This document shows positions 10,685 through 40,485 of a stretch of 64,000 nucleotides of DNA, piece after piece. Under the pieces are notes generated by a model. That model had not been told where the DNA came from. It worked only from the letters and a program-made list of their open reading frames with translations, and did no database searches. The DNA lies in the NCBI GenBank assembly GCA_044892525.1, contig CM097887.1:41292001-41356000 (forward strand). The letters run 5' to 3'. The position numbers and the translations under genes are program-made. This DNA comes from Schmidtea polychroa (taxonomy: Eukaryota). Each line of letters begins with the position of its first letter. Position 1 is the stretch's first letter.

Positions 10685-11075
10685 TGTTGGGCTGAGTCGA
10701 AAATTTAATCGTTGAAAAATAGGAAAGTAGGGAAGTAGAACATTAAGAAAAATAATAATAAAATAAATAAAATCAGAAATAAAATAGAATAAGATATAAG
10801 GAAAATAATAATTAAGACATAAGAATTAAAACAAAAAATAAAATTAAGAAAAGATTAAAATAGAACAAGTTGACAAATAAATAAAGAGGAATTCAAGAAA
10901 TAATAAGGAAATTAAGGAAATAAATAGAAAAACATATTAAAAATAAAGAAAATAAGGAAAAAACAACCTAAAAACAAGAAAATTATATTAAATTAATAGA
11001 AATAAGCGGTACTCAACTCTGATTGGTCCGCACAAATAAGAATTTGATATATATACAACTACCAAAAACATTAAA

Positions 11076-11153
11076 TTTACTGTTAACCCCGAGCATTTCA
11101 TAGGTAAGAAAAATGTTTACTGTTTTTACTGTTAACCCCGAGCATTTCATAGG
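11076..11153 (+). repeat. 29-bp direct repeat pair in the LTR (copy at 37030-37107)
   Basis: tttactgttaaccccgagcatttcatagg at 11076-11104 and 11125-11153. Confidence 0.9.
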
Positions 11154-13208
11154 ATCGACACTACTAGCCAAGCAACCGTCATTCAGAAAACTCCACAACT
11201 ATTCAAAACCAGTTCAGAGACCGAAATACCATTCATCACAATAATCGACATCCAACGGACCACCATTAGAACTATTTGGAACGAACAACATTGAATTTTG
11301 ACTCAGCCTAACAATAGTAAGGGGTATTTCATTTGTTTATAGATTTATTTAAGTATTTGCAAAGCTAATAATAATGTTAAATATTAACGATTAAACATTT
11401 TAGTTAACTCTCTTCATTTGATTCTCCATTTTAATAACTTTAACGTATTGATGGAATTTGTATTATTTAAGTATTTCCGAATCAATAAAATATTTTAATC
11501 CAGATGTCCGTATTTTATTTGAATTAAAGATTTTATGAATTTTCATTTAACGAGTAACGTGGAGTTGAGATACTCCATGTCATGGTATGAGGTGCCTTCG
11601 GGAGCTCAGCCGGTGGACATGGAGTATTTCAATCGCGCAGCTAGATTGGGCCGAAATGTGAAGGCTTCTTCACGGGTCCTATCGCTGAAGATGCGACTAA
11701 ATTATCACAATGGGGTATGGATAAAAAATAACCGGTAGACAATGATTTCACAAAGATAGTCATACGAATGAAGGGATTTTCAAGGATTTGCACAGTGATT
11801 GAGGGCGTCGCATTCTTCTTTCGTCAAGTCGTTTTCGTAAATCTTACCCCTATTGAAAAATGAGATCCAGACAACGATTTAGTGAACTTCGTCAAAAATA
11901 ACGACATCTCATAGTACGCTTCATCTGGAAACATGGTTTTATCAAATTAATTGCGACAACGTCTATTTGCCGGACTCAGTAGAACTAAATTCGTATGAAA
12001 TTCCATTATCATAGACCCAATGTCATCTAACCTGTCCAGATTGTATGTCAAGTTACGTAAGTATTCTAAAAACTTTGACTAACTCGAAACTATAAAATGC
12101 GAGATTCTACGAAAACCCTCTCTAATATTATAATCAGAAAGTTTTTATAGACTTAGTTATTTCAAAAATTATAAACAGGTAAAATATCACCAAATTTAAT
12201 TAATAACATTTATTTCTACAATAAGAGCCAGGTCATCACTGTATATATCCAAATTATTGAACCTGAGAGAAAAGGACAGGTTTCATCGAGACGGCATTAC
12301 ATCTGAATAGGAAAATCCGAGTAGAATGACGAGAGTAGTAATTTGCTCCAGTATTTGGTAGAATTATTCCCTCGACGATCACAGAAAAGATCCAATAAAT
12401 TTCCAAACGATGGTGATCATTCACACAAGTTGATAAGGGTAAAATTCCGCGATGAGAACTGGCGGTAGCATAAATCATAACTCAAATAGATCACTGTGCA
12501 GAGAAAATCATACGACAGCAGGATCGATAAAATCACCGTGAAAATGGCATACACCAAGTGAGTGAGATAAGATAGTAGCCATACGCGAATCCATGTGGTG
12601 AGAGCACAAAATATCAGACTAGCATACATAATAGTCGCGACACGTGACATTCACAATAGGTCGATAATGTAATCAACTAGTCGACAGTAGTATCCGTAAA
12701 TTTGGACATGTGTTATGACCGATGAGATATCCCATGAGGGTGTTAAAGTAATGGCTGATGTAAACTCATCACATATTTTCAGACCAATGGTAGACAACAT
12801 AGATAATCACATTCACTACCGAATTAAAAGTGCACTTCCAATAACAAATTTCGAATCAAAAAATATGTTGAGAATAGCGATAGTAATTTGTTTGTAATAA
12901 ATTAAAATAGATAACATATAGCAAGGTTTGGTCGCATACTATAATGTCCCTCTACTAAAGCATTATTATATTGTTTCACCAATATTATATTTACCCCCTA
13001 TTAATTATTACGCCCCTCATGTATACGGTTAGATCAATAGAGAGTCAAAGTTAATAACATGCGTCAAACCGAGGGCATTTGGTTAAATAAACTGTTTTAA
13101 CAACTAAGATCCGTAGTAAAACCGGATGGTAGAATAAGTTTTCCTTCTGTTCGACGGTCAAGTATCCACGAATGGACGCGGGTCGTATCTAATTTATTCT
13201 AAAATCGT

Positions 13209-13997
13209 ATGTTCTCCATTTCATTAGTATTATTTATAGCAAGCATGCTACCAGCCACTAAATCGGCATTACGGCCGTGCTTCTCGTGCGCGGATAAAAA
13301 TACGGTGATAAAGGACCTACAGACTCAGATTGGACGTTACAAGAGGAAGATAGACGAGCTGGAAGGGACATGGTTTAGTCCCGCTCGGATGAAAGAGATC
13401 CAAAAGAAGCTCGATCGTAGCGAGCATTGCCGGGACGCGCTAATATCTGAGAGCCGTGCCCAAAGAAGTCTAATCAGAGAACAATCCGAGGCACTGCATA
13501 AGGTTTACGTGCAGGCGGCTACAACCCGAAAAATCGTGCAGATTCCCATCCGAGAGGCCGATGACATCTTTCCGCCTCATCACAACCTTTCCTCGAATCC
13601 ATCTCCACCGTTCAAGAGACCGTGCCGAGACTGCGTCGAAACCGAATGGTCCCCCAAGCGTCCAGATGTTGTCATCACGGGTACCAGTAAGCCCCCCACT
13701 GCTAGTCCATCTGTATCAGTCACCCTTCTGCAAGTGGCATCTTCAAGCAAACCCAAGCGCAAACAACTCTCTCGTGCAGAGCGCAAGAAGAGACAGCGCG
13801 AGCGCGCTACTGCAAAGCCAAACATCCCATCAATAGAGGACTCAACTAACGGTGGCAACTCTCACGTGTCCATCGACCTAACAACGGGACCCTCAGCGCG
13901 AATCATATCAGCCGCTGGCGTAAGGTGGGAAGAGAACGCTTCCGAGTTTTTCAACCTCGACGAATTATTCGCCGACACTGAATGGGAGAAACAATAA
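13209..13997 (+). CDS. LTR-encoded ORF, 5' copy (262 aa; likely start 13245, 250 aa): coiled coil, basic NLS-like stretch, acidic-aromatic tail
   Basis: Open frame with coding-like GC content. Contains KPKRKQLSRAERKKRQRER and ends WEENASEFFNLDELFADTEWEKQ. AATAAA at 13993 and 14121. Confidence 0.7.
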   Translation: MFSISLVLFIASMLPATKSALRPCFSCADKNTVIKDLQTQIGRYKRKIDELEGTWFSPARMKEIQKKLDRSEHCRDALISESRAQRSLIREQSEALHKVYVQAATTRKIVQIPIREADDIFPPHHNLSSNPSPPFKRPCRDCVETEWSPKRPDVVITGTSKPPTASPSVSVTLLQVASSSKPKRKQLSRAERKKRQRERATAKPNIPSIEDSTNGGNSHVSIDLTTGPSARIISAAGVRWEENASEFFNLDELFADTEWEKQ

Positions 13998-14538
13998 AAC
14001 CCCAGTGGCGGTCAGGATGAGGAACAAGGATCCGATCTATGTTGATTATGATGTTTTCTCTTCTTTCGACAAACATTAGTAAAGTGTACAGCTGAATCCT
14101 TGTGTCATAACGTTGAAATTAATAAATCTTGTTGTCTTACACGTTTTCGTTCATGAATAATTAGACTTTAATTAAGTGGGTTGAGTAGAGAACCCGCAAG
14201 ATCTAGTGAGAATTTCCCAATTTGCATTCAGCGAATCCTGATAGGTGGTTGTGTAAGGAAATGGACGTAAGCCCTTCTATCGGCAGTCGTGAATGGGAAG
14301 TCGAGGCCTCAGCAAGGAGTAGTTTTAAGGCAGAAGCTCACCTGCTTGCTGGCGTCTCGCCTGCATAGTGCAGTACCAACGTGAAGTGATTCACGGGCAC
14401 TATGTTGGAAGAAAGTTATGTGGGGTTTCACTCCAGGTTGACAAATCGGTGGCACCTTTTATTCGAGATGGACAATCAACCCTTAGACCCGCCAACATGG
14501 TAGAATGGTCAGCCGAGGTGTGACCCCAACATGATTTT

Positions 14539-14556
14539 TGGGGGCTCAGCCGGGAT
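14539..14556 (+). promoter_or_regulatory. Primer binding site, tRNA-Pro type
   Basis: TGGGGGCTCAGCCGGGAT matches the canonical tRNA-Pro PBS TGGGGGCTCGTCCGGGAT at 16/18 positions. It starts 7 nt after the LTR end. Confidence 0.85.
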
Positions 14557-14873
14557 CTACAGTCGATTGAAATTTCTATTAACGAATGCGAAATTCACCG
14601 GGATTTTCATAAAAAATTAAAGGGATTTATCACATCGATTTTCTGTTTTCGACCGACCATTGCTTGACGAATGCAAATTGACTATTGATTATTAAATTAT
14701 ATCAGGAACCAAGTAGAGAAAATCAAAATGTAGATAATAGAAAAATTAAGGATATATATAAATAAAGGAGATAAAGTAGTCAAGTTAAATAATTAACAAT
14801 GGTTAAAGAAACCAATTAACGAATTAACTATTAATTTACTACATATTATTAAAACATTACTTTTCCAACAGCT

Positions 14874-15359
14874 ATGACAGAATTCGCGAACCAAATGCAA
14901 CAACTGCTCAAGTTTATCGATATAGAAAACGACTCCCTAACAACACTGACGCATAAAAGAGAAAAAATCAACGCGATATTACTACAAGCAATCGGACAAA
15001 CACCAGTCGTACCTAATCATATGATATTAGCCACAGGCCTAAGTCGCCCAGATGGAAAAATAAACCCCGAAACCGTATATCAGTGGTATCAAGAGAGATT
15101 GAACCACCCAACATTAAATCTAGATTATCAGCGTCTAAAAGACTCACTAAATACAATACCAGATGCAATCGAACAAAAAATACAGGAAAAAGTTAACCAA
15201 TTACGAACTTGTATAGCCTGCAAACTCCGTCCTATTCGCGTATTATTCTTACCGTGTGGACACCTCAGTCACTGTGAAGAGTGTGTAAAAGACCTAAAAA
15301 GATGCACGATGTGCAAATATGAAATAAAAGAGACCCATATGGTCTATTATGGCGAATGA
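14874..15359 (+). CDS. 161-aa protein with C-terminal IAP/MDM2-type C3HC4 RING finger (putative E3 ligase)
   Basis: CIACKLRPIRVLFLPCGHLSHCEECVKDLKRCTMCKYEI at the extreme C-terminus. Acceptor ttttccaacag|ct precedes the ATG; AATAAA at 15463. Confidence 0.85.
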   Translation: MTEFANQMQQLLKFIDIENDSLTTLTHKREKINAILLQAIGQTPVVPNHMILATGLSRPDGKINPETVYQWYQERLNHPTLNLDYQRLKDSLNTIPDAIEQKIQEKVNQLRTCIACKLRPIRVLFLPCGHLSHCEECVKDLKRCTMCKYEIKETHMVYYGE

Positions 15360-15553
15360 AACGGCCGGCGATGTAACGGCAAGTATACGATGTTTGAACA
15401 AGAATGCATGAAATTGTTGAAGTAACACGTACTGTTAATGATTCAATCTTTATGTTTATGATAAATAAATTCGTCTTTAAAAAGTTTTGATGATTAGGAC
15501 TAATAAAATTTGCATGACGAATGAATATTTGCGTGTTTGTTTTGTTTTATTCC

Positions 15554-15580
15554 TTTTTTTTTTTTTTTTTTTTTTTTTTT
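15554..15580 (+). repeat. Poly(T)27 tract inside the element leader
   Basis: Uninterrupted T run. Confidence 0.9.
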
Positions 15581-15953
15581 GGAATCAAATGAAGAGAGGG
15601 TTGAATAACGTGGAATTAGTCCCAATATAGACTGCAGGGGTACAAACCGAGCCACCTTCGGGCGGTACGTCTTATTGCAAGAACCCGTTGGGAGGGGATA
15701 ACTGATCAACCCAAGTAAGAAGCGTAGGGCGGGGTACCATCGCATATGATGAGAAGTTTTTGCGACATGACTGATCACCATGCCAAGGTAGAAATGGATC
15801 ATCGCGATCGTCGTGCGTTTTGAGCAAGGGGGGAAAGGGGAAACACTCCCAAGCGGTAAAGATTAAGTCGACAAATTAAAAGTAGACAGAGAAAATGGTA
15901 AACTAGAGTAAAAGAAGAAAAGAGAAATAGAAGCATGCAGAGCGAGGAATATA

Positions 15954-16434
15954 GAAGATTGAGCTGTTGAATAGTGCCAGCCAGTCGTAAGATCGAGTTG
16001 TTGAATAATCCAACCGATCAGAAGGAAGAAGATTGAGCTGTTGAATAGTGCCAGCCAGTCGTAAGGTCGAGTTGTGAAAAGTCCAACCGATCAGGAAGGA
16101 GGAAGATTGAGCTGTTGAATAGTGCCAGCCAGTCGTAAGATCGAGTTGTTGAATAGTCCAACCGATCAGAAGGAAGAAGATTGAGCTGTTGAATAGTGCC
16201 AGCCAGTCGTAAGATCGAGTTGTTGAATAGTCCAACCGATCAGAAGGAAGAAGATTGAGCTGTTGAATAGTGCCAGCCAGTCGTAAGGTCGAGTTGTGAA
16301 AAGTCCAACCGATCAGGAAGGAGGAAGATTGAGCTGTTGAATAGTGCCAGCCAGTCGTAAGATCGAGTTGTTGAATAGTCTAACCGATCAGAAGGAAGAA
16401 GATTGAGCTGTTGAATAGTGCCAGCCAGTCGTAA
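15954..16434 (+). repeat. 74-bp tandem array, 6.5 copies, with A-B-A-A-B-A higher-order structure
   Basis: Units start at 15954, 16028, 16102, 16176, 16250, 16324 and 16398. B units carry ggtcgagttgtgaaaagt...caggaaggag. Confidence 0.95.
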
Positions 16435-17740
16435 AGGCCTAGAAAAGCGAGAGATAGCAGTTAAGCTACAATGAGATAATATTTAAATTACTAGTGATAT
16501 GGAATATTAAAGCTAGCTAGAACAAATTGAATGTAATTTTGAAAATTCGAGTTTAGAGAGGAAATAAACGAGCTCGTGGAAAAGAAAATAAGATTATAAT
16601 GAAAAAGGAAAGGGAAGAAGGAAACGAATTAAAGAGATAATAGAAAATAAAGAATAGATGAAATGATGATAATGAGTAAAGAGGAAAGTAACTAACTAAT
16701 TAAAGGGATCCCAGTGAAGTAGAGAAACTCTACGGAATTTTTTTTGGGTAAACCGGGAAAATGTATTTTTACCGGTTCCAGAGTAGAACCGAGTGGGATA
16801 ATAGTAAATACGAAAAGTAAAACAGCGACAACAGCGCAAAGGAATAAGAAAACGAAGGGGGGTAATAAGCAGAGACTGACAACGACCTATTTTTACTATA
16901 ATTGATAACGAATAGATAATTATTACGACTTTATAGATAATTGTTACTACCCCATATAGATAATTTAAAATCGACGGAAAATACGGGCTGATGGGATATT
17001 ATAACCCGCAGAAAGGATTTCACAAAAGATAAAGGGAGCACAAACAGAAACCTAAAAGGTGTCTGTTTTTGAATGTTGTAGAAAGAATGATGAAGTCGTG
17101 TAAGCAAATGCAACACGAGATCATTTTTTCATTTTAGATATCAAGCCAATCCAGCCAACCAAGACAATCCAGAACCTGCACAAAAGGAATTCGAAGAAAA
17201 TCGACAATCAACCAAGGATAAATCCATTCAGAACCCGCACCGAGAGACACAGCAACCGGAAGACTCCAGAACGGAAGAAGTATTAGCAGCCATCTGCCAA
17301 GGATTAGTAAATCTCCTCAGGATCTCAGTAGCAGATTCATACAGAATATTTATCGGAGGAAACACAATCAGAACCGAACGCGTCCAATTCAATAGCCACT
17401 AATTACCAAGAAGCGTAAGAAAGGAATCACGGATAAACCCAATCTTAGATCTTCTAGTAAGCCAGGAGACGTATTATTTTCAGGAGACGAATTACAACAA
17501 CTCAAAAGAGGACGATCCATTAAACATCAAAGAGGAATATCACAAGGATCCAGAAGAACCAATCAAGTACCCATATTTGACCAAGAAAATCTCGGATATA
17601 CCCCTAGTCGATCTCGAAGTAGAGAAAGTCTGTCCGATATCACTAATAGTTTAGCAACGTCAACCGAGGAGTTATCAGCCCAAAGTTTAGTCACATCGTT
17701 AGACAATTTAAAAGAAACAGACGAACCTAGAACACCAATC

Positions 17741-18646
17741 ATGACGAATGTCGTAAAAACCGACGAGTATAAAGAGAAGTTCAGAGGAGAACCTTTCAAC
17801 GGAAACGCAAACAAGCTAGCATCGTTCATAACTAATTTTGAAGTTTATATCACTGTGTGTGGATGGACACCCGAAGCAATTAGTAAAAGGATGCCGTTGT
17901 TTTTGTGCGATAGTGCATTAGAGGTATATTTAGAAGCTAAAGAGAGAGACACGAAATTAGAAAAGTGGGAAGATATTAAAACATTCCTGAAGAAAACCTT
18001 CGGAGCCAGTAAGCCAATCAACCAGGCGTTGGGCGAACTAGCAAATAGGAAACAAAGAGCAAACGAATCGATAACATTATATGCCAGTGAATTGCGGAGA
18101 TTAGCGAAGAAAGCAATGAATGGAAAATTACCCGAAGAAAATCTGATCGGTTATTTCATAGAGGGATTACGCCGAGAAGAAGTAAGAGCCTCAGTAGGTT
18201 GTCAAATGTGCAAAACATTAGAGGAAGCCATAGATTGGGCTACAAGATGCGAGCTCCACCTTCCAGCTCAAATGAATATTATGCAAGAGGAGGGAAGGAT
18301 AGCGACAGCAATAGCGAAAGCGGATAACGGAGATAACAACAATCAAGAACCGAAAATGAATCAATTTATACCAGGAGCGCACCAAATTTTCAAACCACCA
18401 CAAGGACGATCAAACGGGAATAATGGTAATCGTAACAACCCGAATAATGAGAACAATTTCAATAATCGACGAAATATGAACGATAACAAGCAGTGCCGAA
18501 CATGCGGTAAACCAGGACACTGGGACAGAGATTGTTATAGAAATTCAAATTGTAATCGTTGCGGACGGCGTGGACATACCGAAAATGTATGCCAATTGCG
18601 AGGCTGTTTTGACTGTGGTCAGCCAGGTCACATCTCCAGAGATTGC
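17741..18646 (+). other. gag: Gag: capsid-like domain plus three CCHC zinc knuckles
   Basis: KQRANESITLYASELRRL...YFIEGL, then CRTCGKPGHWDRDC, CNRCGRRGHTENVC and CFDCGQPGHISRDC (18494-18646). Confidence 0.93.
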
Positions 18647-31754: not shown

Positions 31755-32114
31755 ATGGATCAAGGAAATAACGAAATGAACCACAATACAGTAACTGAAG
31801 AATTATGGAAGCAACAATGTGCCGTATTAGCACAATTAGTGTCCAATTTGCAAGAACAAGGACTGACGATGCACAGAAACCTGATCGAGAGTATGAACAG
31901 AGGATTTAGTTATTTGAAGATAATTGAAGACCAGAGGTTAAAAATCGAACAAATGCAAAGAGAGATAGAGAGGATAACCCAATATAGCCGTCGACAGGAA
32001 ATTGAAATAGACAGAATGATGGAGGAAGCAGAACAGACGGAAATAGAAGACTGGTCGGAATGGCTAATGAATAGAGAGGAGAGCGGACACGAAGCCGACT
32101 CTTCCGAACCCTAA
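31755..32114 (+). CDS. 119-aa coiled-coil accessory protein
   Basis: Same A-rich codon style as the polyprotein; heptad-like E/Q/R-rich sequence. Confidence 0.7.
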   Translation: MDQGNNEMNHNTVTEELWKQQCAVLAQLVSNLQEQGLTMHRNLIESMNRGFSYLKIIEDQRLKIEQMQREIERITQYSRRQEIEIDRMMEEAEQTEIEDWSEWLMNREESGHEADSSEP

Positions 32115-32199: not shown

Positions 32200-33588
32200 A
32201 TGGATAAACGACAAAGAGAAGAGTTCAGAGAGATTGTCGAGCAAGTCCGAAAATCTACAACGATCAGAATACACAAACATGTTATGTGCGGAATATGTGA
32301 AAAGTTGTTAAAGGAACCTCACCAAACGCAATGTGGATGCAGAGTATGTAAAGAATGTATCAGTGAAGCAATAAAGAATAGACCACAGAAGTGCCCGGTG
32401 TGTAAAGAGACACTAATATCGAGTTTAGAAGACACTAACGAGGATAAAGCCGCAGTGAAAGACATGTTAAACACCAACCTGGGATGCAAAAATGCCCCAT
32501 GCGAATGGAAAGGAGTAATATGGAAGGTAGTACAACATATGGGAGAATGTATGTACAGAATTGGCCAGTGTGAAAGGTGCCATAAAACCATTCGAGCAAG
32601 CGAAGAAAAAGAGCATCAAAGGCAGTGTGAAGAGAGATTGGAAAGATGTGAACACTGTGGAGAAATAGATACGTGGATAAATCTCACCCTCAAACATCAC
32701 AATGTCCAAGAGGAGAGAGTATGTGCGGAGTTCAGTGGGGAATGCCCAAACGGATGTAACCAAGGGGAAATAATGAAGGTGGCACAGCATCTAAGGGAAT
32801 GCGAAAAGAAAAGAATGACATGTGTACTAGGTAGATGGGGTTGTCAGAAATTACTACACCGAGGTGAGTTACCACATCATTTAGTAGAAAATGCTTCAAC
32901 TCACGCAGAAATGTGGTCGACTGCGTTACAAGAAAGCGAAGAGAAAGTAAAACAAATGGAGATAGAGATAACATCGTTGAAAGTGTTAGTCAAAGAACTA
33001 CTAGAAGAAAGGGAAGCGTTCGAAGAAGCCCGAGCAAACATAAAGATGCAAATAAACCGAACAGAAATTAGTAATAATCAGGCCAAGGAGCTACATCAGA
33101 AAATACGGGAAATAAATCTAAATGAGATAACCCCAACAGCACCCTACATATGGAAAATAACGGGAGTAAAAGAAAGAATACGAAAAGCAAAAACCGGAGA
33201 AGAGACAAGAATAACAAGTCCTACATTCCATTCTTGGAAAAATGGGTACAAAATGAAAATGAAGGTATATCCCAACGGGGACGGAACCGGATTGGATACG
33301 CACTTTTCGATTTTCTTTCTGTTATGTAAAGGAGAATACGACGAAATATTAGAATGGCCGTTCCAGGCAAAAATCGATATTACTCTGATGAACAACCAAA
33401 GTATACATGAGCAAAGCTTCAAAACAACGGGGAATCAAATAGCTTACCAGAGGCCCCTCAACGAAGAAGGATCAGCAACAGGAGCACCCACGTTCATCTC
33501 ACAACAAAGAGTGGAAGATATGGCGAGAAATGATACCATATATATCAAGATGACCGTGAGGAAAGAGGAGAAGGGTAGAACGGAATAA
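32200..33588 (+). CDS. TRAF: Full-length intronless TRAF homolog (RING, TRAF zinc fingers, coiled coil, MATH)
   Basis: CGIC...CGCRVC..C...CPVC; repeated C..C...H...C fingers; MATH motifs YIWKI, GYKMKMKVYPNGDGTGLDTHFSIFF, GEYDEILEWPF. Confidence 0.93.
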   Translation: MDKRQREEFREIVEQVRKSTTIRIHKHVMCGICEKLLKEPHQTQCGCRVCKECISEAIKNRPQKCPVCKETLISSLEDTNEDKAAVKDMLNTNLGCKNAPCEWKGVIWKVVQHMGECMYRIGQCERCHKTIRASEEKEHQRQCEERLERCEHCGEIDTWINLTLKHHNVQEERVCAEFSGECPNGCNQGEIMKVAQHLRECEKKRMTCVLGRWGCQKLLHRGELPHHLVENASTHAEMWSTALQESEEKVKQMEIEITSLKVLVKELLEEREAFEEARANIKMQINRTEISNNQAKELHQKIREINLNEITPTAPYIWKITGVKERIRKAKTGEETRITSPTFHSWKNGYKMKMKVYPNGDGTGLDTHFSIFFLLCKGEYDEILEWPFQAKIDITLMNNQSIHEQSFKTTGNQIAYQRPLNEEGSATGAPTFISQQRVEDMARNDTIYIKMTVRKEEKGRTE

Positions 33589-33726: not shown

Positions 33727-34836
33727 ATGAATAAATTCCTTTTCATAATAAAAAGATTAATCGATGTCTATGATTTAGAGATGACACAAGAGAAAATAAC
33801 CGAAACTGCGATAGCCCCAACCAATGTCAACAAGACACAAATTCCCCGAGAACATAATAAAAAATGGAACAAAGTAATGTTCCAACTAACTAATCTCACC
33901 CGAAATCACATCGAAGAAACTAGAGAAGATGAGAATAGTCAATACCAATGGTTAATACACAACTTAAGAGCGGAAGCAGAAGCATGCAAAAGAGCATCAA
34001 AATGGGCGTCACTAGAAAATACCCGCCAAGAAGCACACAGCCACTACTTAAAGCAGCTAGTGCAGGAAGCGAGAAAAAGACTTACCGATGAGAACACCAA
34101 GCGCGAAGCGGAAAAACAAATAGAAGACAGGAAAATGATGCACTTAGTGGCAGAAGCGAGAAAATGGAAAAGACAAAACAGAGAAATGAAAAAAGAGATG
34201 AAAGAATTGCCCATGAGACTCGGATATGAAAGCGAACAAGGTAAATGGGAGGAGAATTTAATAATAAAGGAAGAATTGAAAAGGTTGAGAAAAGTCGCCG
34301 CCCGAAGCCAAACCTGGCAAACAAAGGCTATGGAGTTTGAGCGACATTTGGCAATGAAGTGCGACATAAGAGAGCACGAGAATGCCGCAATGGAAGAGAT
34401 GATAACCCAACAAGCGGGACGGGTTGTGGAATTAGTAAATCAGGTAGAAGAGATGAAAAGAGACCTTAATGGATTACAAGGATCGCTGGAACAAAGAAAC
34501 ATGGTCCTAGCGGGAAAAAACAGAAAATTAGAAAACGAAAGGAAAATGTACACCGAAAATATTAAAAACTTAGAAATAGAAATTGAAAAATGGAAGGGCG
34601 ACGAGAAAATCAAGGCCCTAGACAAACAGATAGAGGCGAAAGATGAAGAGACAAGGTATCTCACCTATCTGCTCGACGAGGAATTGAATATCACTCGAGC
34701 TCTAAGAGACGAAGTTAGTGAATTGAGAGCTCAAATTCCCCAATATTACCTACCATACGACCCTATTGCGATACAGTTACATTCCGCGGTCGATAGTGAT
34801 GAAGGTTATGTAGGCCAGGAGGAAACCTTCGTATGA
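33727..34836 (+). CDS. 369-aa long coiled-coil protein (possible start 33781)
   Basis: Open frame, E/K/R/L-rich heptads, element-like codon usage. Confidence 0.75.
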   Translation: MNKFLFIIKRLIDVYDLEMTQEKITETAIAPTNVNKTQIPREHNKKWNKVMFQLTNLTRNHIEETREDENSQYQWLIHNLRAEAEACKRASKWASLENTRQEAHSHYLKQLVQEARKRLTDENTKREAEKQIEDRKMMHLVAEARKWKRQNREMKKEMKELPMRLGYESEQGKWEENLIIKEELKRLRKVAARSQTWQTKAMEFERHLAMKCDIREHENAAMEEMITQQAGRVVELVNQVEEMKRDLNGLQGSLEQRNMVLAGKNRKLENERKMYTENIKNLEIEIEKWKGDEKIKALDKQIEAKDEETRYLTYLLDEELNITRALRDEVSELRAQIPQYYLPYDPIAIQLHSAVDSDEGYVGQEETFV

Positions 34837-34950: not shown

Positions 34951-35703
34951 ATGTATACGTATAAGTCGCACTATAGCGCACCATTAACTGTACATATTAT
35001 AGATATGAAAATCGAGGAAATGATAGAAATTATGAGCGACGTAGAAGAGGGAGAGATTGAGGCAGAAACAACAGAAACACAAACGCTAAAGGCCGAGTTA
35101 CGGGAAGAGAAATACGAAAACGGGAGATTAATAAACAAATACCTGGAGGACCGGAAAATGATAAAGGTGTTAAAGAAAGAGTGCGAAGCGTTGGGGGAAA
35201 TAAAAAGAGAAACGGAAGAGGAAAATGAATGGCTACACGAACAAAGGAAGCGAGGGAAAAACTGGGAAAAGATAGCGGAAGAGCTATGGAAAGAGAGGGC
35301 AAGCTTCAAAGCAAAGGAGGTAATCCAAGACTACTGGAAAACTGAGGCGAAGGAGCGCCAAACAGCTATAAATAAATTAAAACGACAACTAGAAGAAAAC
35401 CAACGGGAAAGTAAAGAAATGAGGAAGTGGGTTCGCAAATATAGAGAAATAGAAAGAAAACATCAACAACAAAATTACCTGCAAGAAAACGAACAAGATC
35501 TCCTACAAATCGAGCTAAAAAGAAACCTTGAAAAGAAAAGGGAAGAAATTAGACGCTTGGAAAAAGAAATTAGACATCTAAAGAGAGAAGCCCGTGAAAA
35601 AGACCGACAATTGGAAATGCTGCCCGAGTTAAGACACAGGGTAATTAAAGCAGAGTCCACCTTGATGAGAATCGGTGAAAATAATCCAAATCAGAACCAT
35701 TAA
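34951..35703 (+). CDS. 250-aa coiled-coil protein (likely start 35005)
   Basis: Open frame with E/K/R-rich heptads. The first 18 codons resemble spacer sequence. Confidence 0.75.
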   Translation: MYTYKSHYSAPLTVHIIDMKIEEMIEIMSDVEEGEIEAETTETQTLKAELREEKYENGRLINKYLEDRKMIKVLKKECEALGEIKRETEEENEWLHEQRKRGKNWEKIAEELWKERASFKAKEVIQDYWKTEAKERQTAINKLKRQLEENQRESKEMRKWVRKYREIERKHQQQNYLQENEQDLLQIELKRNLEKKREEIRRLEKEIRHLKREAREKDRQLEMLPELRHRVIKAESTLMRIGENNPNQNH

Positions 35704-35743
35704 ATTAAGGGTCATTAAAACCAATTGTAAATAAACATAATGA

Positions 35744-36412
35744 ATGTATAATAGTATCATGCGAGGCGAGATGATGATAACAATGATGGTATTGATGATT
35801 CTGATGGAGAACAAACAATTAAACGCCCAACCGAAAATCGTACGAGATTACCGCAATCAAAATCAAGAACCTAAACAAGAATCCGGCAAATGCACATACC
35901 CTATGACCGTAAAAACCCATATCATCCAAACCATTCAATCAACCCGATCCCACATCAACAACATCCAAACAATGTGTAAAAAGAACCCCATTTGTAAAAT
36001 GATAAACAAACAAATCTTCGAACAAAGCCAACAGATCGACCAGTTGGAACAACAAATGCAACAAGAGGATTTTGAAAATCTTGTAGAAAAGCCAAAAACA
36101 CCTCCCGAGATCAATGACACCCATTATCTCATATATGTGGTGATCGCAGAGACCCTCCTCCTATGTCTACCAATATTCATGAAAATTTACGAAATTCGAA
36201 ATAGATGTAGAGTCTCGACATCAATAAGAGTAACCTCGAACCAAAATCCTCAAGAAGTGCCCCTGACAAATCTTAACCCAACCCCATTCCGACCTCGAAC
36301 CCCGAGTAATCAACCAATCCAGCCGAAATCTAATAGTCAGACCTATCTCAACATCAATACCCAAACCAACCAACAGCCGCCAGCAGAAGCATCAATGGTT
36401 AACAGTTCATAA
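35744..36412 (+). CDS. 222-aa predicted type I membrane protein (signal peptide, Cys/coiled-coil ectodomain, TM, Pro/Asn-rich tail)
   Basis: MMITMMVLMILM...LNA|Q; TM YLIYVVIAETLLLCLPIFM followed by KIYEIRNR. Confidence 0.7.
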   Translation: MYNSIMRGEMMITMMVLMILMENKQLNAQPKIVRDYRNQNQEPKQESGKCTYPMTVKTHIIQTIQSTRSHINNIQTMCKKNPICKMINKQIFEQSQQIDQLEQQMQQEDFENLVEKPKTPPEINDTHYLIYVVIAETLLLCLPIFMKIYEIRNRCRVSTSIRVTSNQNPQEVPLTNLNPTPFRPRTPSNQPIQPKSNSQTYLNINTQTNQQPPAEASMVNSS

Positions 36413-36638: not shown

Positions 36639-39600
36639 TGTTGGGCTGAGTCGAAAATTTAATCGTTGAAAAATAGGAAAGTAGGGAAGTAGAACATTAA
36701 GAAAAATAATAATAAAATAAATAAAATCAGAAATAAAATAGAATAAGATATAAGGAAAATAATAATTAAGACATAAGAATTAAAACAAAAAATAAAATTA
36801 AGAAAAGATTAAAATAGAACAAGTTGACAAATAAATAAAGAGGAATTCAAGAAATAATAAGGAAATTAAGGAAATAAATAGAAAAACATATTAAAAATAA
36901 AGAAAATAAGGAAAAAACAACCTAAAAACAAGAAAATTATATTAAATTAATAGAAATAAGCGGTACTCAACTCTGATTGGTCCGCACAAATAAGAATTTG
37001 ATATATATACAACTACCAAAAACATTAAATTTACTGTTAACCCCGAGCATTTCATAGGTAAGAAAAATGTTTACTGTTTTTACTGTTAACCCCGAGCATT
37101 TCATAGGATCGACACTACTAGCCAAGCAACCGTCATTCAGAAAACTCCACAACTATTCAAAACCAGTTCAGAGACCGAAATACCATTCATCACAATAATC
37201 GACATCCAACGGACCACCATTAGAACTATTTGGAACGAACAACATTGAATTTTGACTCAGCCTAACAATAGTAAGGGGTATTTCATTTGTTTATAGATTT
37301 ATTTAAGTATTTGCAAAGCTAATAATAATGTTAAATATTAACGATTAAACATTTTAGTTAACTCTCTTCATTTGATTCTCCATTTTAATAACTTTAACGT
37401 ATTGATGGAATTTGTATTATTTAAGTATTTCCGAATCAATAAAATATTTTAATCCAGATGTCCGTATTTTATTTGAATTAAAGATTTTATGAATTTTCAT
37501 TTAACGAGTAACGTGGAGTTGAGATACTCCATGTCATGGTATGAGGTGCCTTCGGGAGCTCAGCCGGTGGACATGGAGTATTTCAATCGCGCAGCTAGAT
37601 TGGGCCGAAATGTGAAGGCTTCTTCACGGGTCCTATCGCTGAAGATGCGACTAAATTATCACAATGGGGTATGGATAAAAAATAACCGGTAGACAATGAT
37701 TTCACAAAGATAGTCATACGAATGAAGGGATTTTCAAGGATTTGCACAGTGATTGAGGGCGTCGCATTCTTCTTTCGTCAAGTCGTTTTCGTAAATCTTA
37801 CCCCTATTGAAAAATGAGATCCAGACAACGATTTAGTGAACTTCGTCAAAAATAACGACATCTCATAGTACGCTTCATCTGGAAACATGGTTTTATCAAA
37901 TTAATTGCGACAACGTCTATTTGCCGGACTCAGTAGAACTAAATTCGTATGAAATTCCATTATCATAGACCCAATGTCATCTAACCTGTCCAGATTGTAT
38001 GTCAAGTTACGTAAGTATTCTAAAAACTTTGACTAACTCGAAACTATAAAATGCGAGATTCTACGAAAACCCTCTCTAATATTATAATCAGAAAGTTTTT
38101 ATAGACTTAGTTATTTCAAAAATTATAAACAGGTAAAATATCACCAAATTTAATTAATAACATTTATTTCTACAATAAGAGCCAGGTCATCACTGTATAT
38201 ATCCAAATTATTGAACCTGAGAGAAAAGGACAGGTTTCATCGAGACGGCATTACATCTGAATAGGAAAATCCGAGTAGAATGACGAGAGTAGTAATTTGC
38301 TCCAGTATTTGGTAGAATTATTCCCTCGACGATCACAGAAAAGATCCAATAAATTTCCAAACGATGGTGATCATTCACACAAGTTGATAAGGGTAAAATT
38401 CCGCGATGAGAACTGGCGGTAGCATAAATCATAACTCAAATAGATCACTGTGCAGAGAAAATCATACGACAGCAGGATCGATAAAATCACCGTGAAAATG
38501 GCATACACCAAGTGAGTGAGATAAGATAGTAGCCATACGCGAATCCATGTGGTGAGAGCACAAAATATCAGACTAGCATACATAATAGTCGCGACACGTG
38601 ACATTCACAATAGGTCGATAATGTAATCAACTAGTCGACAGTAGTATCCGTAAATTTGGACATGTGTTATGACCGATGAGATATCCCATGAGGGTGTTAA
38701 AGTAATGGCTGATGTAAACTCATCACATATTTTCAGACCAATGGTAGACAACATAGATAATCACATTCACTACCGAATTAAAAGTGCACTTCCAATAACA
38801 AATTTCGAATCAAAAAATATGTTGAGAATAGCGATAGTAATTTGTTTGTAATAAATTAAAATAGATAACATATAGCAAGGTTTGGTCGCATACTATAATG
38901 TCCCTCTACTAAAGCATTATTATATTGTTTCACCAATATTATATTTACCCCCTATTAATTATTACGCCCCTCATGTATACGGTTAGATCAATAGAGAGTC
39001 AAAGTTAATAACATGCGTCAAACCGAGGGCATTTGGTTAAATAAACTGTTTTAACAACTAAGATCCGTAGTAAAACCGGATGGTAGAATAAGTTTTCCTT
39101 CTGTTCGACGGTCAAGTATCCACGAATGGACGCGGGTCGTATCTAATTTATTCTAAAATCGTATGTTCTCCATTTCATTAGTATTATTTATAGCAAGCAT
39201 GCTACCAGCCACTAAATCGGCATTACGGCCGTGCTTCTCGTGCGCGGATAAAAATACGGTGATAAAGGACCTACAGACTCAGATTGGACGTTACAAGAGG
39301 AAGATAGACGAGCTGGAAGGGACATGGTTTAGTCCCGCTCGGATGAAAGAGATCCAAAAGAAGCTCGATCGTAGCGAGCATTGCCGGGACGCGCTAATAT
39401 CTGAGAGCCGTGCCCAAAGAAGTCTAATCAGAGAACAATCCGAGGCACTGCATAAGGTTTACGTGCAGGCGGCTACAACCCGAAAAATCGTGCAGATTCC
39501 CATCCGAGAGGCCGATGACATCTTTCCGCCTCATCACAACCTTTCCTCGAATCCATCTCCACCGTTCAAGAGACCGTGCCGAGACTGCGTCGAAACCGAA

Positions 39601-40485
39601 TGGTCCCCCAAGCGTCCAGATGTTGTCATCACGGGTACCAGTAAGCCCCCCACTGCTAGTCCATCTGTATCAGTCACCCTTCTGCAAGTGGCATCTTCAA
39701 GCAAACCCAAGCGCAAACAACTCTCTCGTGCAGAGCGCAAGAAGAGACAGCGCGAGCGCGCTACTGCAAAGCCAAACATCCCATCAATAGAGGACTCAAC
39801 TAACGGTGGCAACTCTCACGTGTCCATCGACCTAACAACGGGACCCTCAGCGCGAATCATATCAGCCGCTGGCGTAAGGTGGGAAGAGAACGCTTCCGAG
39901 TTTTTCAACCTCGACGAATTATTCGCCGACACTGAATGGGAGAAACAATAAAACCCCAGTGGCGGTCAGGATGAGGAACAAGGATCCGATCTATGTTGAT
40001 TATGATGTTTTCTCTTCTTTCGACAAACATTAGTAAAGTGTACAGCTGAATCCTTGTGTCATAACGTTGAAATTAATAAATCTTGTTGTCTTACACGTTT
40101 TCGTTCATGAATAATTAGACTTTAATTAAGTGGGTTGAGTAGAGAACCCGCAAGATCTAGTGAGAATTTCCCAATTTGCATTCAGCGAATCCTGATAGGT
40201 GGTTGTGTAAGGAAATGGACGTAAGCCCTTCTATCGGCAGTCGTGAATGGGAAGTCGAGGCCTCAGCAAGGAGTAGTTTTAAGGCAGAAGCTCACCTGCT
40301 TGCTGGCGTCTCGCCTGCATAGTGCAGTACCAACGTGAAGTGATTCACGGGCACTATGTTGGAAGAAAGTTATGTGGGGTTTCACTCCAGGTTGACAAAT
40401 CGGTGGCACCTTTTATTCGAGATGGACAATCAACCCTTAGACCCGCCAACATGGTAGAATGGTCAGCCGAGGTGTGACCCCAACA
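36639..40485 (+). repeat. 3' LTR (3,847 bp)
   Basis: Copy of 10685-14531, followed by the AAAT TSD. Confidence 0.97.
39163..39951 (+). CDS. LTR-encoded ORF, 3' copy
   Basis: Translation identical to 13209-13997. Confidence 0.7.
   Translation: MFSISLVLFIASMLPATKSALRPCFSCADKNTVIKDLQTQIGRYKRKIDELEGTWFSPARMKEIQKKLDRSEHCRDALISESRAQRSLIREQSEALHKVYVQAATTRKIVQIPIREADDIFPPHHNLSSNPSPPFKRPCRDCVETEWSPKRPDVVITGTSKPPTASPSVSVTLLQVASSSKPKRKQLSRAERKKRQRERATAKPNIPSIEDSTNGGNSHVSIDLTTGPSARIISAAGVRWEENASEFFNLDELFADTEWEKQ

What the first reader, a model, noticed from the sequence alone, without database searches (positions are those of the whole stretch)
10685..40485. Intact 29.8-kb enveloped gypsy-type endogenous retrovirus with a complex-virus-sized accessory genome
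Seen in sequence: full LTR pair, TSD, PBS, one 4,617-aa ORF with all catalytic residues, and seven extra ORFs. Established: giant (>30 kb) gypsy 'Burro' elements exist in the planarian Schmidtea mediterranea, so the size class may be known. I cannot tell whether this family, its envelope or its accessory set has been described. Inference: a potentially infectious, immune-modulating invertebrate retrovirus rather than a simple retrotransposon.
Basis: partly seen in the sequence, partly recalled or inferred. Interest (0 to 1): 0.93.

Follow-up and report, generated by a model that had tools for sequence, protein, structure and literature searches.

The report
Intact giant Burro-type gypsy provirus
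This is a complete, very recently inserted 29.8-kb retrovirus-like element of the giant 'Burro' kind already described in planarian flatworms. It carries an envelope gene related to those of chuviruses and several host-like signalling genes, so it is a good specimen of a known oddity, not a new kind of virus.

Summary
Window 10685-40485 is bounded by two identical 3,847-bp LTRs (TG...CA), a 4-bp target duplication and a PBS-like site. It has one 4,617-aa ORF with every protease, RT, RNase H and integrase catalytic residue, plus six further distinct ORFs longer than any shuffle produced.

The polyprotein reads Gag, three CCHC knuckles, a 1,290-aa orphan region, Env, PR, RT, RNase H, IN, ankyrin repeats and an orphan tail. 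Pol is Ty3/gypsy-type. Env is a class III, herpesvirus-gB-fold fusogen whose nearest free-virus relatives are chuvirus glycoproteins. It keeps its own signal peptide and membrane anchor. Accessory ORFs include a full TRAF homologue and an IAP-type RING protein.

This architecture was published for Burro/GYPSM1 and for flatworm GAG-ENV-POL errantiviruses, including the in-frame env, the TRAF/RING/ankyrin domains and the provirus hypothesis.

This copy differs in layout from the published Burro1 description: TRAF is a separate downstream gene, and no BIR, Bcl-2 or dUTPase is detectable. Its family identity could not be tested because no planarian sequence was reachable. Infectivity and immune modulation remain inferences.

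The parts
10681..10684 (+). 5' copy of the target-site duplication (AAAT)
   Evidence: Same 4 nt directly after the 3' LTR at 40486-40489.
10685..14531 (+). 5' LTR, 3,847 bp, TG...CA, with 7-bp terminal inverted repeat
   Evidence: Identical to 36639-40485, 0 mismatches. A-rich low-complexity repeats at its 5' end. U3/R/U5 boundaries are not determinable from sequence.
13209..13997 (+). ORF inside the LTR, 262 aa, orphan; second copy at 39163-39951
   Evidence: longest ORF in LTR shuffles 138 aa. No Pfam or PDB match. Locally GC-rich, 44-54%.
14539..14557 (+). Primer-binding-site-like sequence starting TGG, 7 nt after the LTR
   Evidence: Read from the sequence. The cognate tRNA was not identified.
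14874..15359 (+). Leader ORF, 161 aa, with a C-terminal IAP-type RING and no BIR
   Evidence: Pfam zf-C3HC4_3 3.4e-11. PDB cIAP2/cIAP1/XIAP RING 2.4e-10. Homologous ORF downstream of pol in relative L003, 27% identity over 135 aa, E 6e-13.
15953..16434 (+). Tandem repeat in the leader, 74-nt unit x 6.5 copies, 94% matches
   Evidence: Tandem repeats are drawn in the published Burro maps.
17741..31594 (+). Single 4,617-aa Gag-X-Env-PR-RT-RH-IN-Ank-Y polyprotein ORF
17792..18646 (+). Gag: capsid-like domain (aa 18-169) and three CCHC zinc knuckles (aa 252-302)
   Evidence: Retrotrans_gag 1.7e-11, Ty3_capsid 3.3e-6, zf-CCHC 1.8e-11. Three C-X2-C-X4-H-X4-C motifs.
18650..22501 (+). Orphan region, aa 304-1587: almost cysteine-free, charged, with a possible ubiquitin-like fold near aa 1157-1191
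   Evidence: No Pfam or PDB hit. No similarity to any fetched relative. Weak ubiquitin hit, E 0.078. AF2 model unusable, pLDDT 37.6.
22502..24520 (+). Env module, aa 1588-2260: Met, signal-peptide-like segment, class III ectodomain, TM (aa 2178-2200), basic tail
   Evidence: PF24664 6.9e-71. Chuvirus glycoprotein relatives. AF2 pLDDT 85.3. Foldseek herpesvirus gB 1.5e-14 and chu-like virus glycoproteins 1e-39, TM up to 0.6. Hydrophobic segments.
24929..25204 (+). Aspartic protease, aa 2397-2488, DTG at 2411
   Evidence: RVP 2.3e-9; motif.
25868..26920 (+). Reverse transcriptase (YIDD at 2817) and RNase H (to aa 3060)
   Evidence: RVT_1 1.2e-35, RT_RNaseH 7e-39. Ty3 Gag-Pol 7q5b 4.2e-117 and Ty3 RT/RNase H 4ol8 5.8e-93.
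27242..28315 (+). Integrase: HHCC zinc domain, DD35E core and conserved C-terminal part (aa 3168-3525)
   Evidence: Integrase_H2C2 4.1e-20, rve 2.4e-12. Alignment to Ty3 and spacing. C-terminal conservation with relatives.
28610..30022 (+). Two ankyrin-repeat blocks fused after integrase (aa 3624-3734 and 3953-4094)
   Evidence: Ank_2 4.3e-17. PDB ankyrin-repeat hits only; the latrotoxin rows match through their ankyrin repeats alone.
30023..31594 (+). Orphan C-terminal region, aa 4095-4617, with two hydrophobic segments (about 4285-4303 and 4549-4571)
   Evidence: No Pfam or PDB hit; hydropathy.
31755..32114 (+). Small acidic ORF, 119 aa, orphan
   Evidence: composition. At 119 aa it falls within the range that shuffles reach, so it is the least secure ORF.
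32200..33588 (+). TRAF homologue, 462 aa: RING, TRAF-type zinc-finger region, coiled coil, TRAF-C/MATH
   Evidence: MATH 2.1e-27 and RING 6.3e-5. PDB TRAF2/TRAF3 TRAF domains about 1e-27 and TRAF6 RING-Zn fingers 6.3e-15. Nearest database protein is only 36% identical.
33727..34836 (+). ORF, 369 aa, E/K/L/R-rich (coiled-coil-like), orphan
34951..35703 (+). ORF, 250 aa, E/K/R-rich (coiled-coil-like), orphan
35744..36412 (+). ORF, 222 aa, Q/N/I/T/P-rich, orphan
36639..40485 (+). 3' LTR, carrying the second copy of the LTR ORF at 39163-39951
40486..40489 (+). 3' copy of the target-site duplication (AAAT)

Best explanation
This is an intact, recently integrated provirus of the giant Burro-type lineage of Ty3/gypsy (Metaviridae) elements, sitting in very AT-rich DNA of the kind reported for planarians. 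It belongs to the GAG-ENV-POL 'errantivirus-like' class.

Shown: identical LTRs with a TSD; one ORF encoding Gag/NC, a chuvirus-like class III (gB-fold) envelope fusogen with its own signal-like segment and membrane anchor, then PR-RT-RNase H-IN with all catalytic residues, then ankyrin repeats; separate cistrons for an IAP-type RING protein (leader), a full TRAF homologue, four orphans downstream of pol and one orphan in the LTR.

Inferred mechanism: genomic RNA made from the 5' LTR is translated into one polyprotein. The internal signal sequence inserts the Env ectodomain into the ER lumen, where signal peptidase would separate Gag-X from Env. The TM segment stops transfer, so the tail and Pol stay cytosolic and membrane-tethered until the element's protease cuts them. 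Particles with Env could then pass between cells, for instance from differentiated tissue, where BURRO1 is reported to be expressed, to stem cells, much as Drosophila gypsy is thought to reach the germline. tRNA-primed reverse transcription and DDE integration give the 4-bp duplication. The TRAF, IAP-RING and ankyrin modules most plausibly act on host ubiquitin, NF-kB or cell-death signalling. The downstream genes need their own transcripts or splicing.
For: Structure and youth: (LTRs 0 mismatches, TSD).
Coding capacity beyond chance, A-rich plus strand continuous from 16 to 36 kb.
Pol is Ty3-type and catalytically complete.
Env: PF24664 6.9e-71. 1,073 homologues, with the stand-alone ones named as Chuviridae glycoproteins. 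All ten nearly invariant cysteines of the family alignment are present. AF2 pLDDT 85.3. gB fold E 1.5e-14. Chu-like glycoproteins E 1e-39.
Internal signal model: a hydrophobic segment plus small-residue motif lies directly before the ectodomain, followed by a strong TM. All 20 in-frame relatives examined keep both features, and 3 of them have no Met within 60 aa upstream.
Accessory genes. RING ORF shared with relative L003.
Kind already described: PMC6431247, PMC13524379, PMC8532177.
Against: No transcript, protein, copy-number or polymorphism data exist for this copy.
Host identity is untested; only base composition fits a planarian.
No sequence of any named Burro family was reachable, so family membership rests on architecture.
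No clear polypurine tract, and the PBS candidate sits 7 nt from the LTR without an identified tRNA.
The Env ectodomain has a single N-glycosylation sequon, and its fusion loops were not examined.
Its signal-like h-region is less hydrophobic (2.05) than in most relatives (2.1-3.4).
Identical LTRs could in principle reflect assembly polishing or gene conversion.
BIR, Bcl-2-like, dUTPase and in-frame MATH, reported for Burro1, were not detected here.
Confidence: 0.82

Rival explanations
1. Same element, different expression logic. Env is not made as part of the polyprotein. It is made from a spliced subgenomic mRNA that starts translation at the Met just before the signal peptide (aa 1588), as in Drosophila gypsy and retroviruses. 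The in-frame arrangement is then incidental, or serves Gag-Pol only after the env segment is spliced out.
For: A Met lies 12 residues before the hydrophobic core, followed by basic residues, the normal layout of an N-terminal signal peptide. Most relatives also have a Met within 60 aa upstream. Free chuvirus glycoproteins start at the equivalent place.
Against: Three in-frame relatives have no Met within 60 aa upstream of the ectodomain. In several relatives Env sits at the N-terminus of an Env-Pol fusion (P0221, P0029), so Env-Pol co-translation is evidently tolerated. The frame is kept open for 13.9 kb. No splice sites were established.
Confidence: 0.3
2. A purely intracellular giant retrotransposon. 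The env, TRAF and RING modules are carried along, or serve intracellular roles such as membrane targeting of assembly. The element never leaves the cell, so 'retrovirus' is a misnomer.
For: No evidence of particles or horizontal spread was obtained here. The published survey stresses that env-carrying Ty3/gypsy elements need not share the gypsy life cycle. Only one N-glycosylation sequon lies in the ectodomain.
Against: The Env module keeps the signal segment, all nearly invariant cysteines, a confidently predicted class III fold and the TM anchor. The same module is retained across many divergent relatives at 33-46% identity. That pattern indicates purifying selection on a fusogen.
Confidence: 0.25
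3. A composite or artefact. The accessory block (31.6-36.6 kb) or the leader ORF comes from a nested insertion, captured host DNA or a mis-assembly, not from the element's own genome.
For: The accessory ORFs have no homologues in the fetched relatives except the RING ORF. The spacers carry a local repeated motif.
Against: No internal long direct repeats other than the LTRs and the leader tandem array. All ORFs are on one strand and tile without overlap. A-richness and GC are continuous from the polyprotein through the block and stop at the LTR. Relatives L003 and L004 also carry several ORFs after pol. Published Burro elements carry accessory ORFs.
Confidence: 0.04
4. It is simply one of the already named Schmidtea mediterranea families (Burro-2, -3 or -4) with nothing new at family level.
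For: Three CCHC knuckles, as reported for the S. mediterranea element, against two in the other planarian. Flanks are more than 70% A+T, as reported for that genome. The literature says Burro-2 to -4 carry the same set of motifs.
Against: Not testable here: no reference sequence was reachable. Exact look-ups and related-locus scans found nothing closer than about 45% identity. Total length is just under the '>30 kb' quoted. BIR, Bcl-2 and dUTPase motifs were not detected.
Confidence: 0.45

Closest known systems
Burro / GYPSM1 giant gypsy-like LTR retrotransposons of dugesiid planarians (Jurka 2007; Grohme et al. 2018; Arkhipova and Yushenova 2019, PMC6431247)
   Same: Multi-kb LTRs. About 22-25 kb internal region. 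A single ORF of about 4,600-5,100 aa with Gag, CCHC knuckles, env in frame between gag and pol, and PR-RT-RH-IN. RING, MATH/TRAF and ankyrin modules. Leader tandem repeats. Accessory ORFs that can sit inside or outside the polyprotein. Env with hits to mononegavirus-type glycoproteins.
   Different: The ORF here is 4,617 aa, against 4,873 aa (Burro1) and 5,140 aa (the other planarian). TRAF is a separate gene downstream of pol, not inside the polyprotein (Burro1) or upstream (the other planarian). An IAP-type RING ORF sits in the leader. No BIR, Bcl-2-like, dUTPase or midasin-like motif was detected. Sequence identity to any Burro family could not be measured.
GAG-ENV-POL errantivirus-like Ty3/gypsy elements with HSV/gB-type Env in Platyhelminthes, Nematoda and Bryozoa (eLife 2026, PMC13524379)
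   Same: Ty3/gypsy Pol, class III gB-fold Env, gene order gag-env-pol, intact copies flanked by near-identical LTRs.
   Different: That survey treats three ORFs and does not mention accessory genes, fusion into one frame or giant size. Here everything from Gag to IN is one frame, and there are at least six further genes.
Chuviridae (Jingchuvirales) glycoproteins and their capture by mosquito BEL/Pao and arthropod gypsy elements (Dezordi et al. 2020, PMC7642597; PMC13524379)
   Same: Same glycoprotein family (PF24664), same predicted fold, with signal peptide, ectodomain and TM layout. A retroelement carries a negative-strand-RNA-virus-type fusogen.
   Different: Only 18-28% identity to free chuvirus proteins. 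The carrier is a flatworm-type gypsy element, not BEL/Pao. Env is in frame inside the polyprotein and not a 3' ORF.
Drosophila gypsy (Errantivirus)
   Same: Ty3/gypsy Pol plus a viral fusogen. Soma-to-germline style transmission is the working model that this element could parallel. Both are under piRNA control, published for BURRO1 (PMC8532177).
   Different: Gypsy Env is F-type (class I) and encoded by a separate 3' ORF from a spliced mRNA. Gypsy is about 7.5 kb and has no accessory genes.
Complex retroviruses and large foamy-like fish ERVs with accessory ORFs
   Same: Extra regulatory genes beside gag, pol and env. Several cistrons 3' of pol that need their own mRNAs.
   Different: Different RT lineage (Retroviridae). 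Those accessory genes are small viral inventions, whereas here at least two are recognisable host-type signalling proteins (TRAF, IAP-type RING). This genome is two to three times larger.

Membership tests
Metaviridae / Ty3-gypsy LTR retroelements | Pol domain order PR-RT-RNase H-IN, with integrase after RT | tested here: met
   Pfam order RVP 2397-2488, RVT_1 2710-2868, RNase H 2931-3060, IN 3168-3340.
Metaviridae / Ty3-gypsy LTR retroelements | RT/RH/IN closest to Ty3-type enzymes and not to Retroviridae, BEL/Pao or Copia | tested here: met
   Best solved-structure hits are Ty3 Gag-Pol 7q5b (4.2e-117) and Ty3 RT 4ol8 (5.8e-93). Retroviral RTs score 1e-33 or weaker. No formal tree was built.
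Metaviridae / Ty3-gypsy LTR retroelements | LTRs ending TG...CA, short target duplication, PBS next to the 5' LTR | tested here: met
   The PBS is only a candidate because no tRNA was matched, and no clear PPT was seen.
GAG-ENV-POL gB-type errantivirus-like elements (operational class of PMC13524379) | Env with the class III, herpesvirus gB-like fold | tested here: met
   AF2 pLDDT 85.3. Foldseek against PDB gB structures E 1.5e-14, probability 1.0.
GAG-ENV-POL gB-type errantivirus-like elements (operational class of PMC13524379) | Gene order gag, env, pol with uninterrupted reading frames and flanking LTRs | tested here: met
GAG-ENV-POL gB-type errantivirus-like elements (operational class of PMC13524379) | Several near-identical copies in the same genome | not testable with these tools
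   Only one 64-kb window is held, and no host genome is in the collections. The window holds one intact copy plus decayed remains of a different family.
Burro (giant planarian gypsy elements) | Giant size: internal region up to 25 kb, total above 30 kb | tested here: inconclusive
   29,801 bp total and 22,107 bp internal. This is the same size class but just under the quoted 30 kb.
Burro (giant planarian gypsy elements) | One polyprotein of about 4,900 aa with Gag/CCHC, env in frame between gag and pol, and PR-RT-RH-IN | tested here: met
   4,617 aa in that order, with three CCHC knuckles. Description in PMC6431247.
Burro (giant planarian gypsy elements) | RING, MATH/TRAF and ankyrin modules | tested here: met
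   Their positions differ from those given for Burro1.
Burro (giant planarian gypsy elements) | BIR, Bcl-2-like, SUMO/ubiquitin-like and dUTPase-like motifs, reported for Burro1 to Burro4 | tested here: not met
   No Pfam hit for BIR, Bcl-2 or dUTPase at E up to 1. There is only a weak ubiquitin hit, E 0.078. The published motifs were found with more sensitive profile methods, so absence is not proven.
Burro (giant planarian gypsy elements) | Sequence identity to a named Burro consensus, and a dugesiid planarian host | not testable with these tools
   No planarian DNA or protein was reachable. Exact look-ups were empty, and the nearest proteins are 42-45% identical metagenome sequences. Grohme et al. 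2018 is not held. The flanks are 70-78% A+T, as reported for Schmidtea.
Chuvirus-type (Monjiviricetes) fusion glycoprotein family PF24664 | Significant match to the family profile over the ectodomain, with conserved cysteines, signal peptide and C-terminal TM | tested here: met
   6.9e-71 against a 27-bit cut-off. Ten nearly invariant Cys are present. Signal-like segment and TM. Named chuvirus relatives.
TRAF family | N-terminal RING, TRAF zinc fingers, coiled coil, C-terminal TRAF-C/MATH | tested here: met
   Aa 28-155 align to TRAF6 RING-Zn fingers (6.3e-15) and aa 246-454 to TRAF2/3 coiled coil plus TRAF-C (about 1e-27). Pfam MATH 2.1e-27 and RING. Binding or ligase activity was not tested.
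IAP family | At least one BIR domain | tested here: not met
   The 161-aa ORF has only the IAP-type C-terminal RING. It is IAP-RING-like and not an IAP.
Retroviridae (endogenous retrovirus in the strict sense) | Retroviridae-type RT/IN and a class I TM/SU Env | tested here: not met
   Pol is Ty3-type and Env is class III.

The most novel reading that the evidence does not exclude
This copy may represent an undescribed, currently active Burro-type lineage that works as a true 'complex' invertebrate retrovirus. In that reading Gag, a signal-peptide-bearing gB-type Env and Pol are threaded through the ER membrane as one polyprotein. A separate cassette of host-derived regulators (TRAF, IAP-type RING, ankyrin, four orphans) with its own intercistronic signals manipulates host NF-kB or cell-death signalling. 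Env would then allow spread from differentiated cells into stem cells or between animals.
Probability: 0.2. Interest if true: 0.7.

Novelty: new member of a known kind. Interest (0 to 1): 0.3.

Why it matters
Burro-type elements make up a large share of planarian genomes. They are among the largest retroelements known and the clearest case of a retroelement carrying both a viral fusogen and host-type signalling genes.

An uninterrupted copy with identical LTRs is a useful reference specimen for three questions. One is how an envelope protein can sit in the middle of a Gag-Pol polyprotein. Another is how env was exchanged between negative-strand RNA viruses and retroelements. The third is what a mobile element gains from encoding TRAF- and IAP-like proteins in an animal whose stem cells are also its germline.

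The points added here are:
- The Env is chuvirus-like with a confidently predicted gB fold.
- The internal signal segment and anchor are conserved in all 20 in-frame relatives examined.
- Metagenomes hold several giant relatives.
- The RING accessory gene is shared with at least one of them.

None of this changes the known picture in kind.

Tried and rejected
- **Placing the element in a named host or Burro family.** Exact-sequence look-ups of three accessory proteins found nothing. The polyprotein search found nothing above 45% identity. Scans of viral and metagenome contigs gave only 40% relatives. The key genome paper is not held, and the 2026 survey has no supplements held.
- **tRNA for the PBS.** No tRNA gene is in the window. 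No Rfam family is in the window either.
- **Hidden domains in aa 304-1590.** Pfam at E up to 1, a PDB sequence search and comparison with all fetched relatives were all empty. A single-sequence AF2 model of aa 1100-1590 had pLDDT 37.6, so I did not send it to fold search. A Bcl-2-like helical bundle there remains possible but unsupported.
- **dUTPase between PR and RT.** Rejected: that stretch aligns with ordinary gypsy relatives and has no Pfam hit.
- **Orphan ORFs (262, 369, 250, 222 aa).** Pfam gave only sub-threshold coiled-coil-type hits. The 262-, 369- and 222-aa ORFs had no PDB sequence match, and the 250-aa ORF was not sent to PDB.
- **TRAF origin.** The only database hit was 36% identical and unnamed, so a host donor could not be named.
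- **Three same-frame downstream ORFs as one interrupted gene.** Rejected: the spacers hold 9 and 4 stops in 47 and 39 codons and are AT-rich.
- **Spacer motif as a family-wide signal.** TGTATATAA is enriched in two spacers but absent from the corresponding regions of relatives.
- **Latrotoxin rows in the PDB search.** These are ankyrin-repeat similarity only.
- **ENA sample ERZ25039515.** Its identity was not found in the literature.

Full report

Yes. A direct-repeat search and a base-by-base comparison show two copies of a 3,847-bp LTR at 10685-14531 and 36639-40485, with no mismatch. They begin TGTTGGG and end CCCAACA. Both are flanked by AAAT, a 4-bp target duplication. Seven bases after the 5' LTR lies a 19-nt stretch beginning TGG (14539-14557) that has the position and start expected of a tRNA primer-binding site. 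I could not match it to a tRNA, because the window has none. I saw no convincing polypurine tract before the 3' LTR.

It contains one ORF of 4,617 aa (17741-31594) and further + strand ORFs of 262 aa (inside the LTR, hence twice), 161, 119, 462, 369, 250 and 222 aa. In 500 shuffles of each sub-region the longest ORF never exceeded 141 aa, and the longest minus-strand ORF in the element is 146 aa. The plus strand is 41% A. This bias runs without break from about 16 kb to 36 kb and stops at the element's ends, while the flanks are 70-78% A+T with no skew.

**2. What the polyprotein contains**

Pfam gives the following order:
- a retrotransposon Gag/Ty3-capsid domain, aa 18-169
- three CCHC knuckles, aa 252-302
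- nothing recognisable from aa 304 to about 1587
- a 'Monjiviricetes_fusion' viral glycoprotein (PF24664, 6.9e-71)
- retroviral protease, aa 2397-2488
- RT, aa 2710-2868
- RNase H, aa 2931-3060
- integrase zinc and core domains, aa 3168-3340
- ankyrin repeats in two blocks, aa 3624-3734 and 3953-4094
- an unassigned tail to aa 4617

The best solved-structure match of PR-IN is the yeast Ty3 Gag-Pol (7q5b, 4.2e-117). Retroviral enzymes score far weaker, so Pol is Metaviridae-type. The protease DTG, RT YIDD, four RNase H acidic residues, the integrase HHCC and D3251/D3311/E3347 are all present and conserved against Ty3 in that alignment. Thirty-five residues lie between the second D and the E.

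The stretch between PR and RT aligns with ordinary gypsy relatives and has no dUTPase signal.

**3. The envelope module**

A search of 1.84 billion representative proteins with aa 1590-2260 found 1,073 homologues. The closest (33-46% identity) are embedded in long retroelement polyproteins from metagenomes. The stand-alone proteins of about 650-690 aa (22-28% identity) are, where named, glycoproteins of Chuviridae. Examples are Tacheng Tick Virus 4, Yichun mivirus and Yanbian Chuvi tick virus 1. One is a chuvirus-derived insertion in a beetle genome.

With a 65-sequence alignment, AlphaFold2 gave a confident model with mean pLDDT 85.3. Foldseek matched it to herpesvirus glycoprotein B structures (E 1.5e-14, probability 1.0). 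Among predicted viral structures it matched chu-like virus glycoproteins best (E 1e-39, TM-score up to 0.6). Env is therefore a class III fusogen of the chuvirus/gB type. All ten nearly invariant cysteines of the alignment are present in this copy.

Directly before the ectodomain there is a Met (aa 1588), a few basic residues, a hydrophobic core (aa 1600-1612) and a small-residue motif. That is the layout of a signal peptide. After the ectodomain comes the strongest hydrophobic segment of the whole polyprotein (aa 2178-2200) and a basic tail. Only one N-glycosylation sequon lies in the ectodomain.

**4. How an envelope protein can sit inside Gag-Pol**

I compared 20 relatives that carry the same module in frame with Pol. 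Every one has a hydrophobic segment within 45 residues before the ectodomain and a membrane anchor after it, as do the three stand-alone relatives compared alongside (two free chuvirus proteins and one chuvirus-derived insertion). Three of the 20 have no methionine within 60 residues upstream. In several (for example P0221 and P0029) Env forms the N-terminus of an Env-Pol fusion.

This favours a model in which the hydrophobic segment acts as an internal signal sequence. Gag and the orphan region would stay in the cytosol. The ectodomain would be translocated and released from Gag by signal peptidase. The anchor would stop transfer, and Pol would remain cytosolic and membrane-tethered until the element's protease acts. 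This is inference.

The rival, a spliced env mRNA starting at Met1588, is not excluded. It is what long-read RNA data would decide.

**5. Accessory genes**

- The 462-aa ORF is a full TRAF homologue. Its aa 28-155 align with the TRAF6 RING and zinc fingers (6.3e-15). Its aa 246-454 align with the coiled coil and TRAF-C domain of TRAF2/TRAF3 (about 1e-27). It is very divergent from anything in the protein database, with the best hit at 36%.
- The 161-aa leader ORF ends in a RING of the cIAP/XIAP type and has no BIR domain. It has a homologue (27% over 135 aa, E 6e-13) in a related giant element, where it lies after pol.
- The 369- and 250-aa ORFs are E/K/R/L-rich and look like coiled coils.
- The 222-aa, 262-aa (LTR) and 119-aa ORFs are orphans.
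- TRAF, the 369-aa ORF and the 250-aa ORF share a frame. They are separated by AT-rich spacers holding 9 and 4 stop codons, so they are separate cistrons.
- Two spacers carry a TATA-like motif, TGTATATAA, five times. The whole 64-kb window has six copies against 1.5 expected. The motif is not shared with relatives.

'Immune-modulating' is a reasonable guess from TRAF and IAP-RING biology, but nothing here tests it.

**6. Comparison with what is known**

The literature already covers this kind of element. Arkhipova and Yushenova (PMC6431247) summarise Burro, which Jurka described earlier as GYPSM1 and Grohme et al. named in 2018. The features they report are:
- thousands of copies in Schmidtea mediterranea, with an internal region up to 25 kb and a total above 30 kb
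- a 4,873-aa ORF1 with Gag and three CCHC knuckles
- RING, Smc-like, MATH/TRAF, BIR, Bcl-2-like, SUMO-like, dUTPase-like and ankyrin motifs
- env in frame between gag and pol, with hits to mononegavirus fusion glycoproteins, called the first such case
- accessory ORFs that may alternatively be subdomains of the polyprotein
- the hypothesis that these are integrated proviruses tinkering with apoptosis and ubiquitination

A 2026 survey (PMC13524379) finds gB-type Env in GAG-ENV-POL order in Platyhelminthes, Nematoda and Bryozoa. It notes that the chuvirus-like glycoprotein of mosquito BEL/Pao elements is structurally gB-like. BURRO1 is expressed in intestinal and other differentiated cells and is held down by SMEDWI-2 piRNAs (PMC8532177).

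**7. What differs, and what I could not test**

Compared with the published Burro1 description:
- the ORF here is shorter
- TRAF is a stand-alone gene after pol
- an IAP-type RING gene sits in the leader
- BIR, Bcl-2, dUTPase and in-frame MATH were not detected with Pfam

The published motifs came partly from more sensitive profile comparisons, so absence is not proven. The only hints are a weak ubiquitin-like hit at aa 1157-1191 (E 0.078) and an all-helical prediction just upstream of Env in an unusable model.

Whether this is Burro-2, -3 or -4, a family from another planarian, or an unnamed family could not be decided. No planarian sequence is reachable with these tools. Host identity rests only on base composition.

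**8. Relatives found**

One ENA metagenome assembly (ERZ25039515) holds several related giant elements:
- a 4,844-aa Env-Pol protein preceded by a 923-aa CCHC protein and followed by ORFs that include an RNase T-like exonuclease and the RING homologue (L003)
- a 4,057-aa Gag-ubiquitin-like-Env-ankyrin-PR-RT-RH-IN protein (P0020)

A JGI metagenome holds a 3,700-aa example with two ORFs after pol. All are only about 40-45% identical to this element in Pol. I could not find what the ENA sample is.

**9. Verdict**

The element is a well-preserved, evidently young member of a known and already remarkable class. I rate it a new member of a known kind, and possibly already known at family level. Interest is modest.

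The most novel reading still open is that it is an active, transmissible 'complex' retrovirus of a flatworm with a membrane-threaded Gag-Env-Pol polyprotein. I give it about 0.2.

While reasoning about the PBS and about which integrase residues form the catalytic triad, I recalled short motif fragments from memory: a generic tRNA T-loop and a well-known retroviral integrase. The assignments in this report rest only on the tool-produced alignment to Ty3 and on spacing computed from the window. The PBS remains 'candidate' for that reason.

For the decayed neighbouring element I report counts and outer bounds only.

Noticed in passing
window 55229-59646 (minus strand) and 52822-53165 (plus strand): Decayed remains of a different Burro-like family. 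Seven protein-level matches on the minus strand correspond to Env through RNase H (aa 1659-3040 of the intact polyprotein) at 30-49% identity. They are spread over all three frames with 20 in-alignment stops. A small plus-strand env scrap shows two matches in two frames with 3 stops. Env and pol are both broken by frameshifts and stops. There is no nucleotide similarity to the intact element.
   Followed up: partly
window 31595-31754 and 33589-33726: The AT-rich spacers after the polyprotein and after the TRAF gene carry the TATA-like motif TGTATATAA three and two times. The whole window has 6 copies against 1.5 expected. A second motif, ATTGTAAAWA, follows three of the ORFs. These may be internal promoter or 3'-end signals for the accessory cistrons. 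The first motif is not shared with relatives.
   Followed up: partly
window 13209-13997 and 39163-39951: A 262-aa orphan ORF lies inside each LTR, in a stretch of 44-54% GC that stands out from the rest of the LTR (30-40%). An AATAAA overlaps its stop codon. Whether it sits in U3, R or U5 is unknown.
   Followed up: partly
window 15953-16434: A 74-nt tandem repeat (6.5 copies, 94% matches, itself an imperfect 37-nt doublet) lies in the 2.4-kb leader between the RING ORF and gag. In addition, the gag frame is open for 115 codons upstream of its first ATG.
   Followed up: no
window 6387-7655 (+) and 42371-43075 (-): Two isolated ORFs of 422 and 234 aa lie in the AT-rich flanks, with no Pfam match. 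They may be host exons or other repeats.
   Followed up: no
L003 (ENA ERZ25039515 contig_100485) 3687-23398; L002; L004: Metagenome contigs carry giant relatives. In L003 a 923-aa CCHC protein is followed by a 4,844-aa Env-...-PR(three protease-like stretches)-RT-RH-IN protein with ankyrin and C2H2 motifs. After it come a 379-aa RNase T-like exonuclease ORF and a 167-aa IAP-type RING ORF. L002 adjoins apparently bacterial genes, which suggests a chimeric assembly or mis-called genes.
   Followed up: partly
polyprotein aa 4285-4303 and 4549-4571 (window about 30593-31453): Two moderately hydrophobic segments lie in the orphan C-terminal tail after the ankyrin repeats. The second is about 45 residues from the end and is reminiscent of a tail anchor. 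No homologue was found.
   Followed up: no
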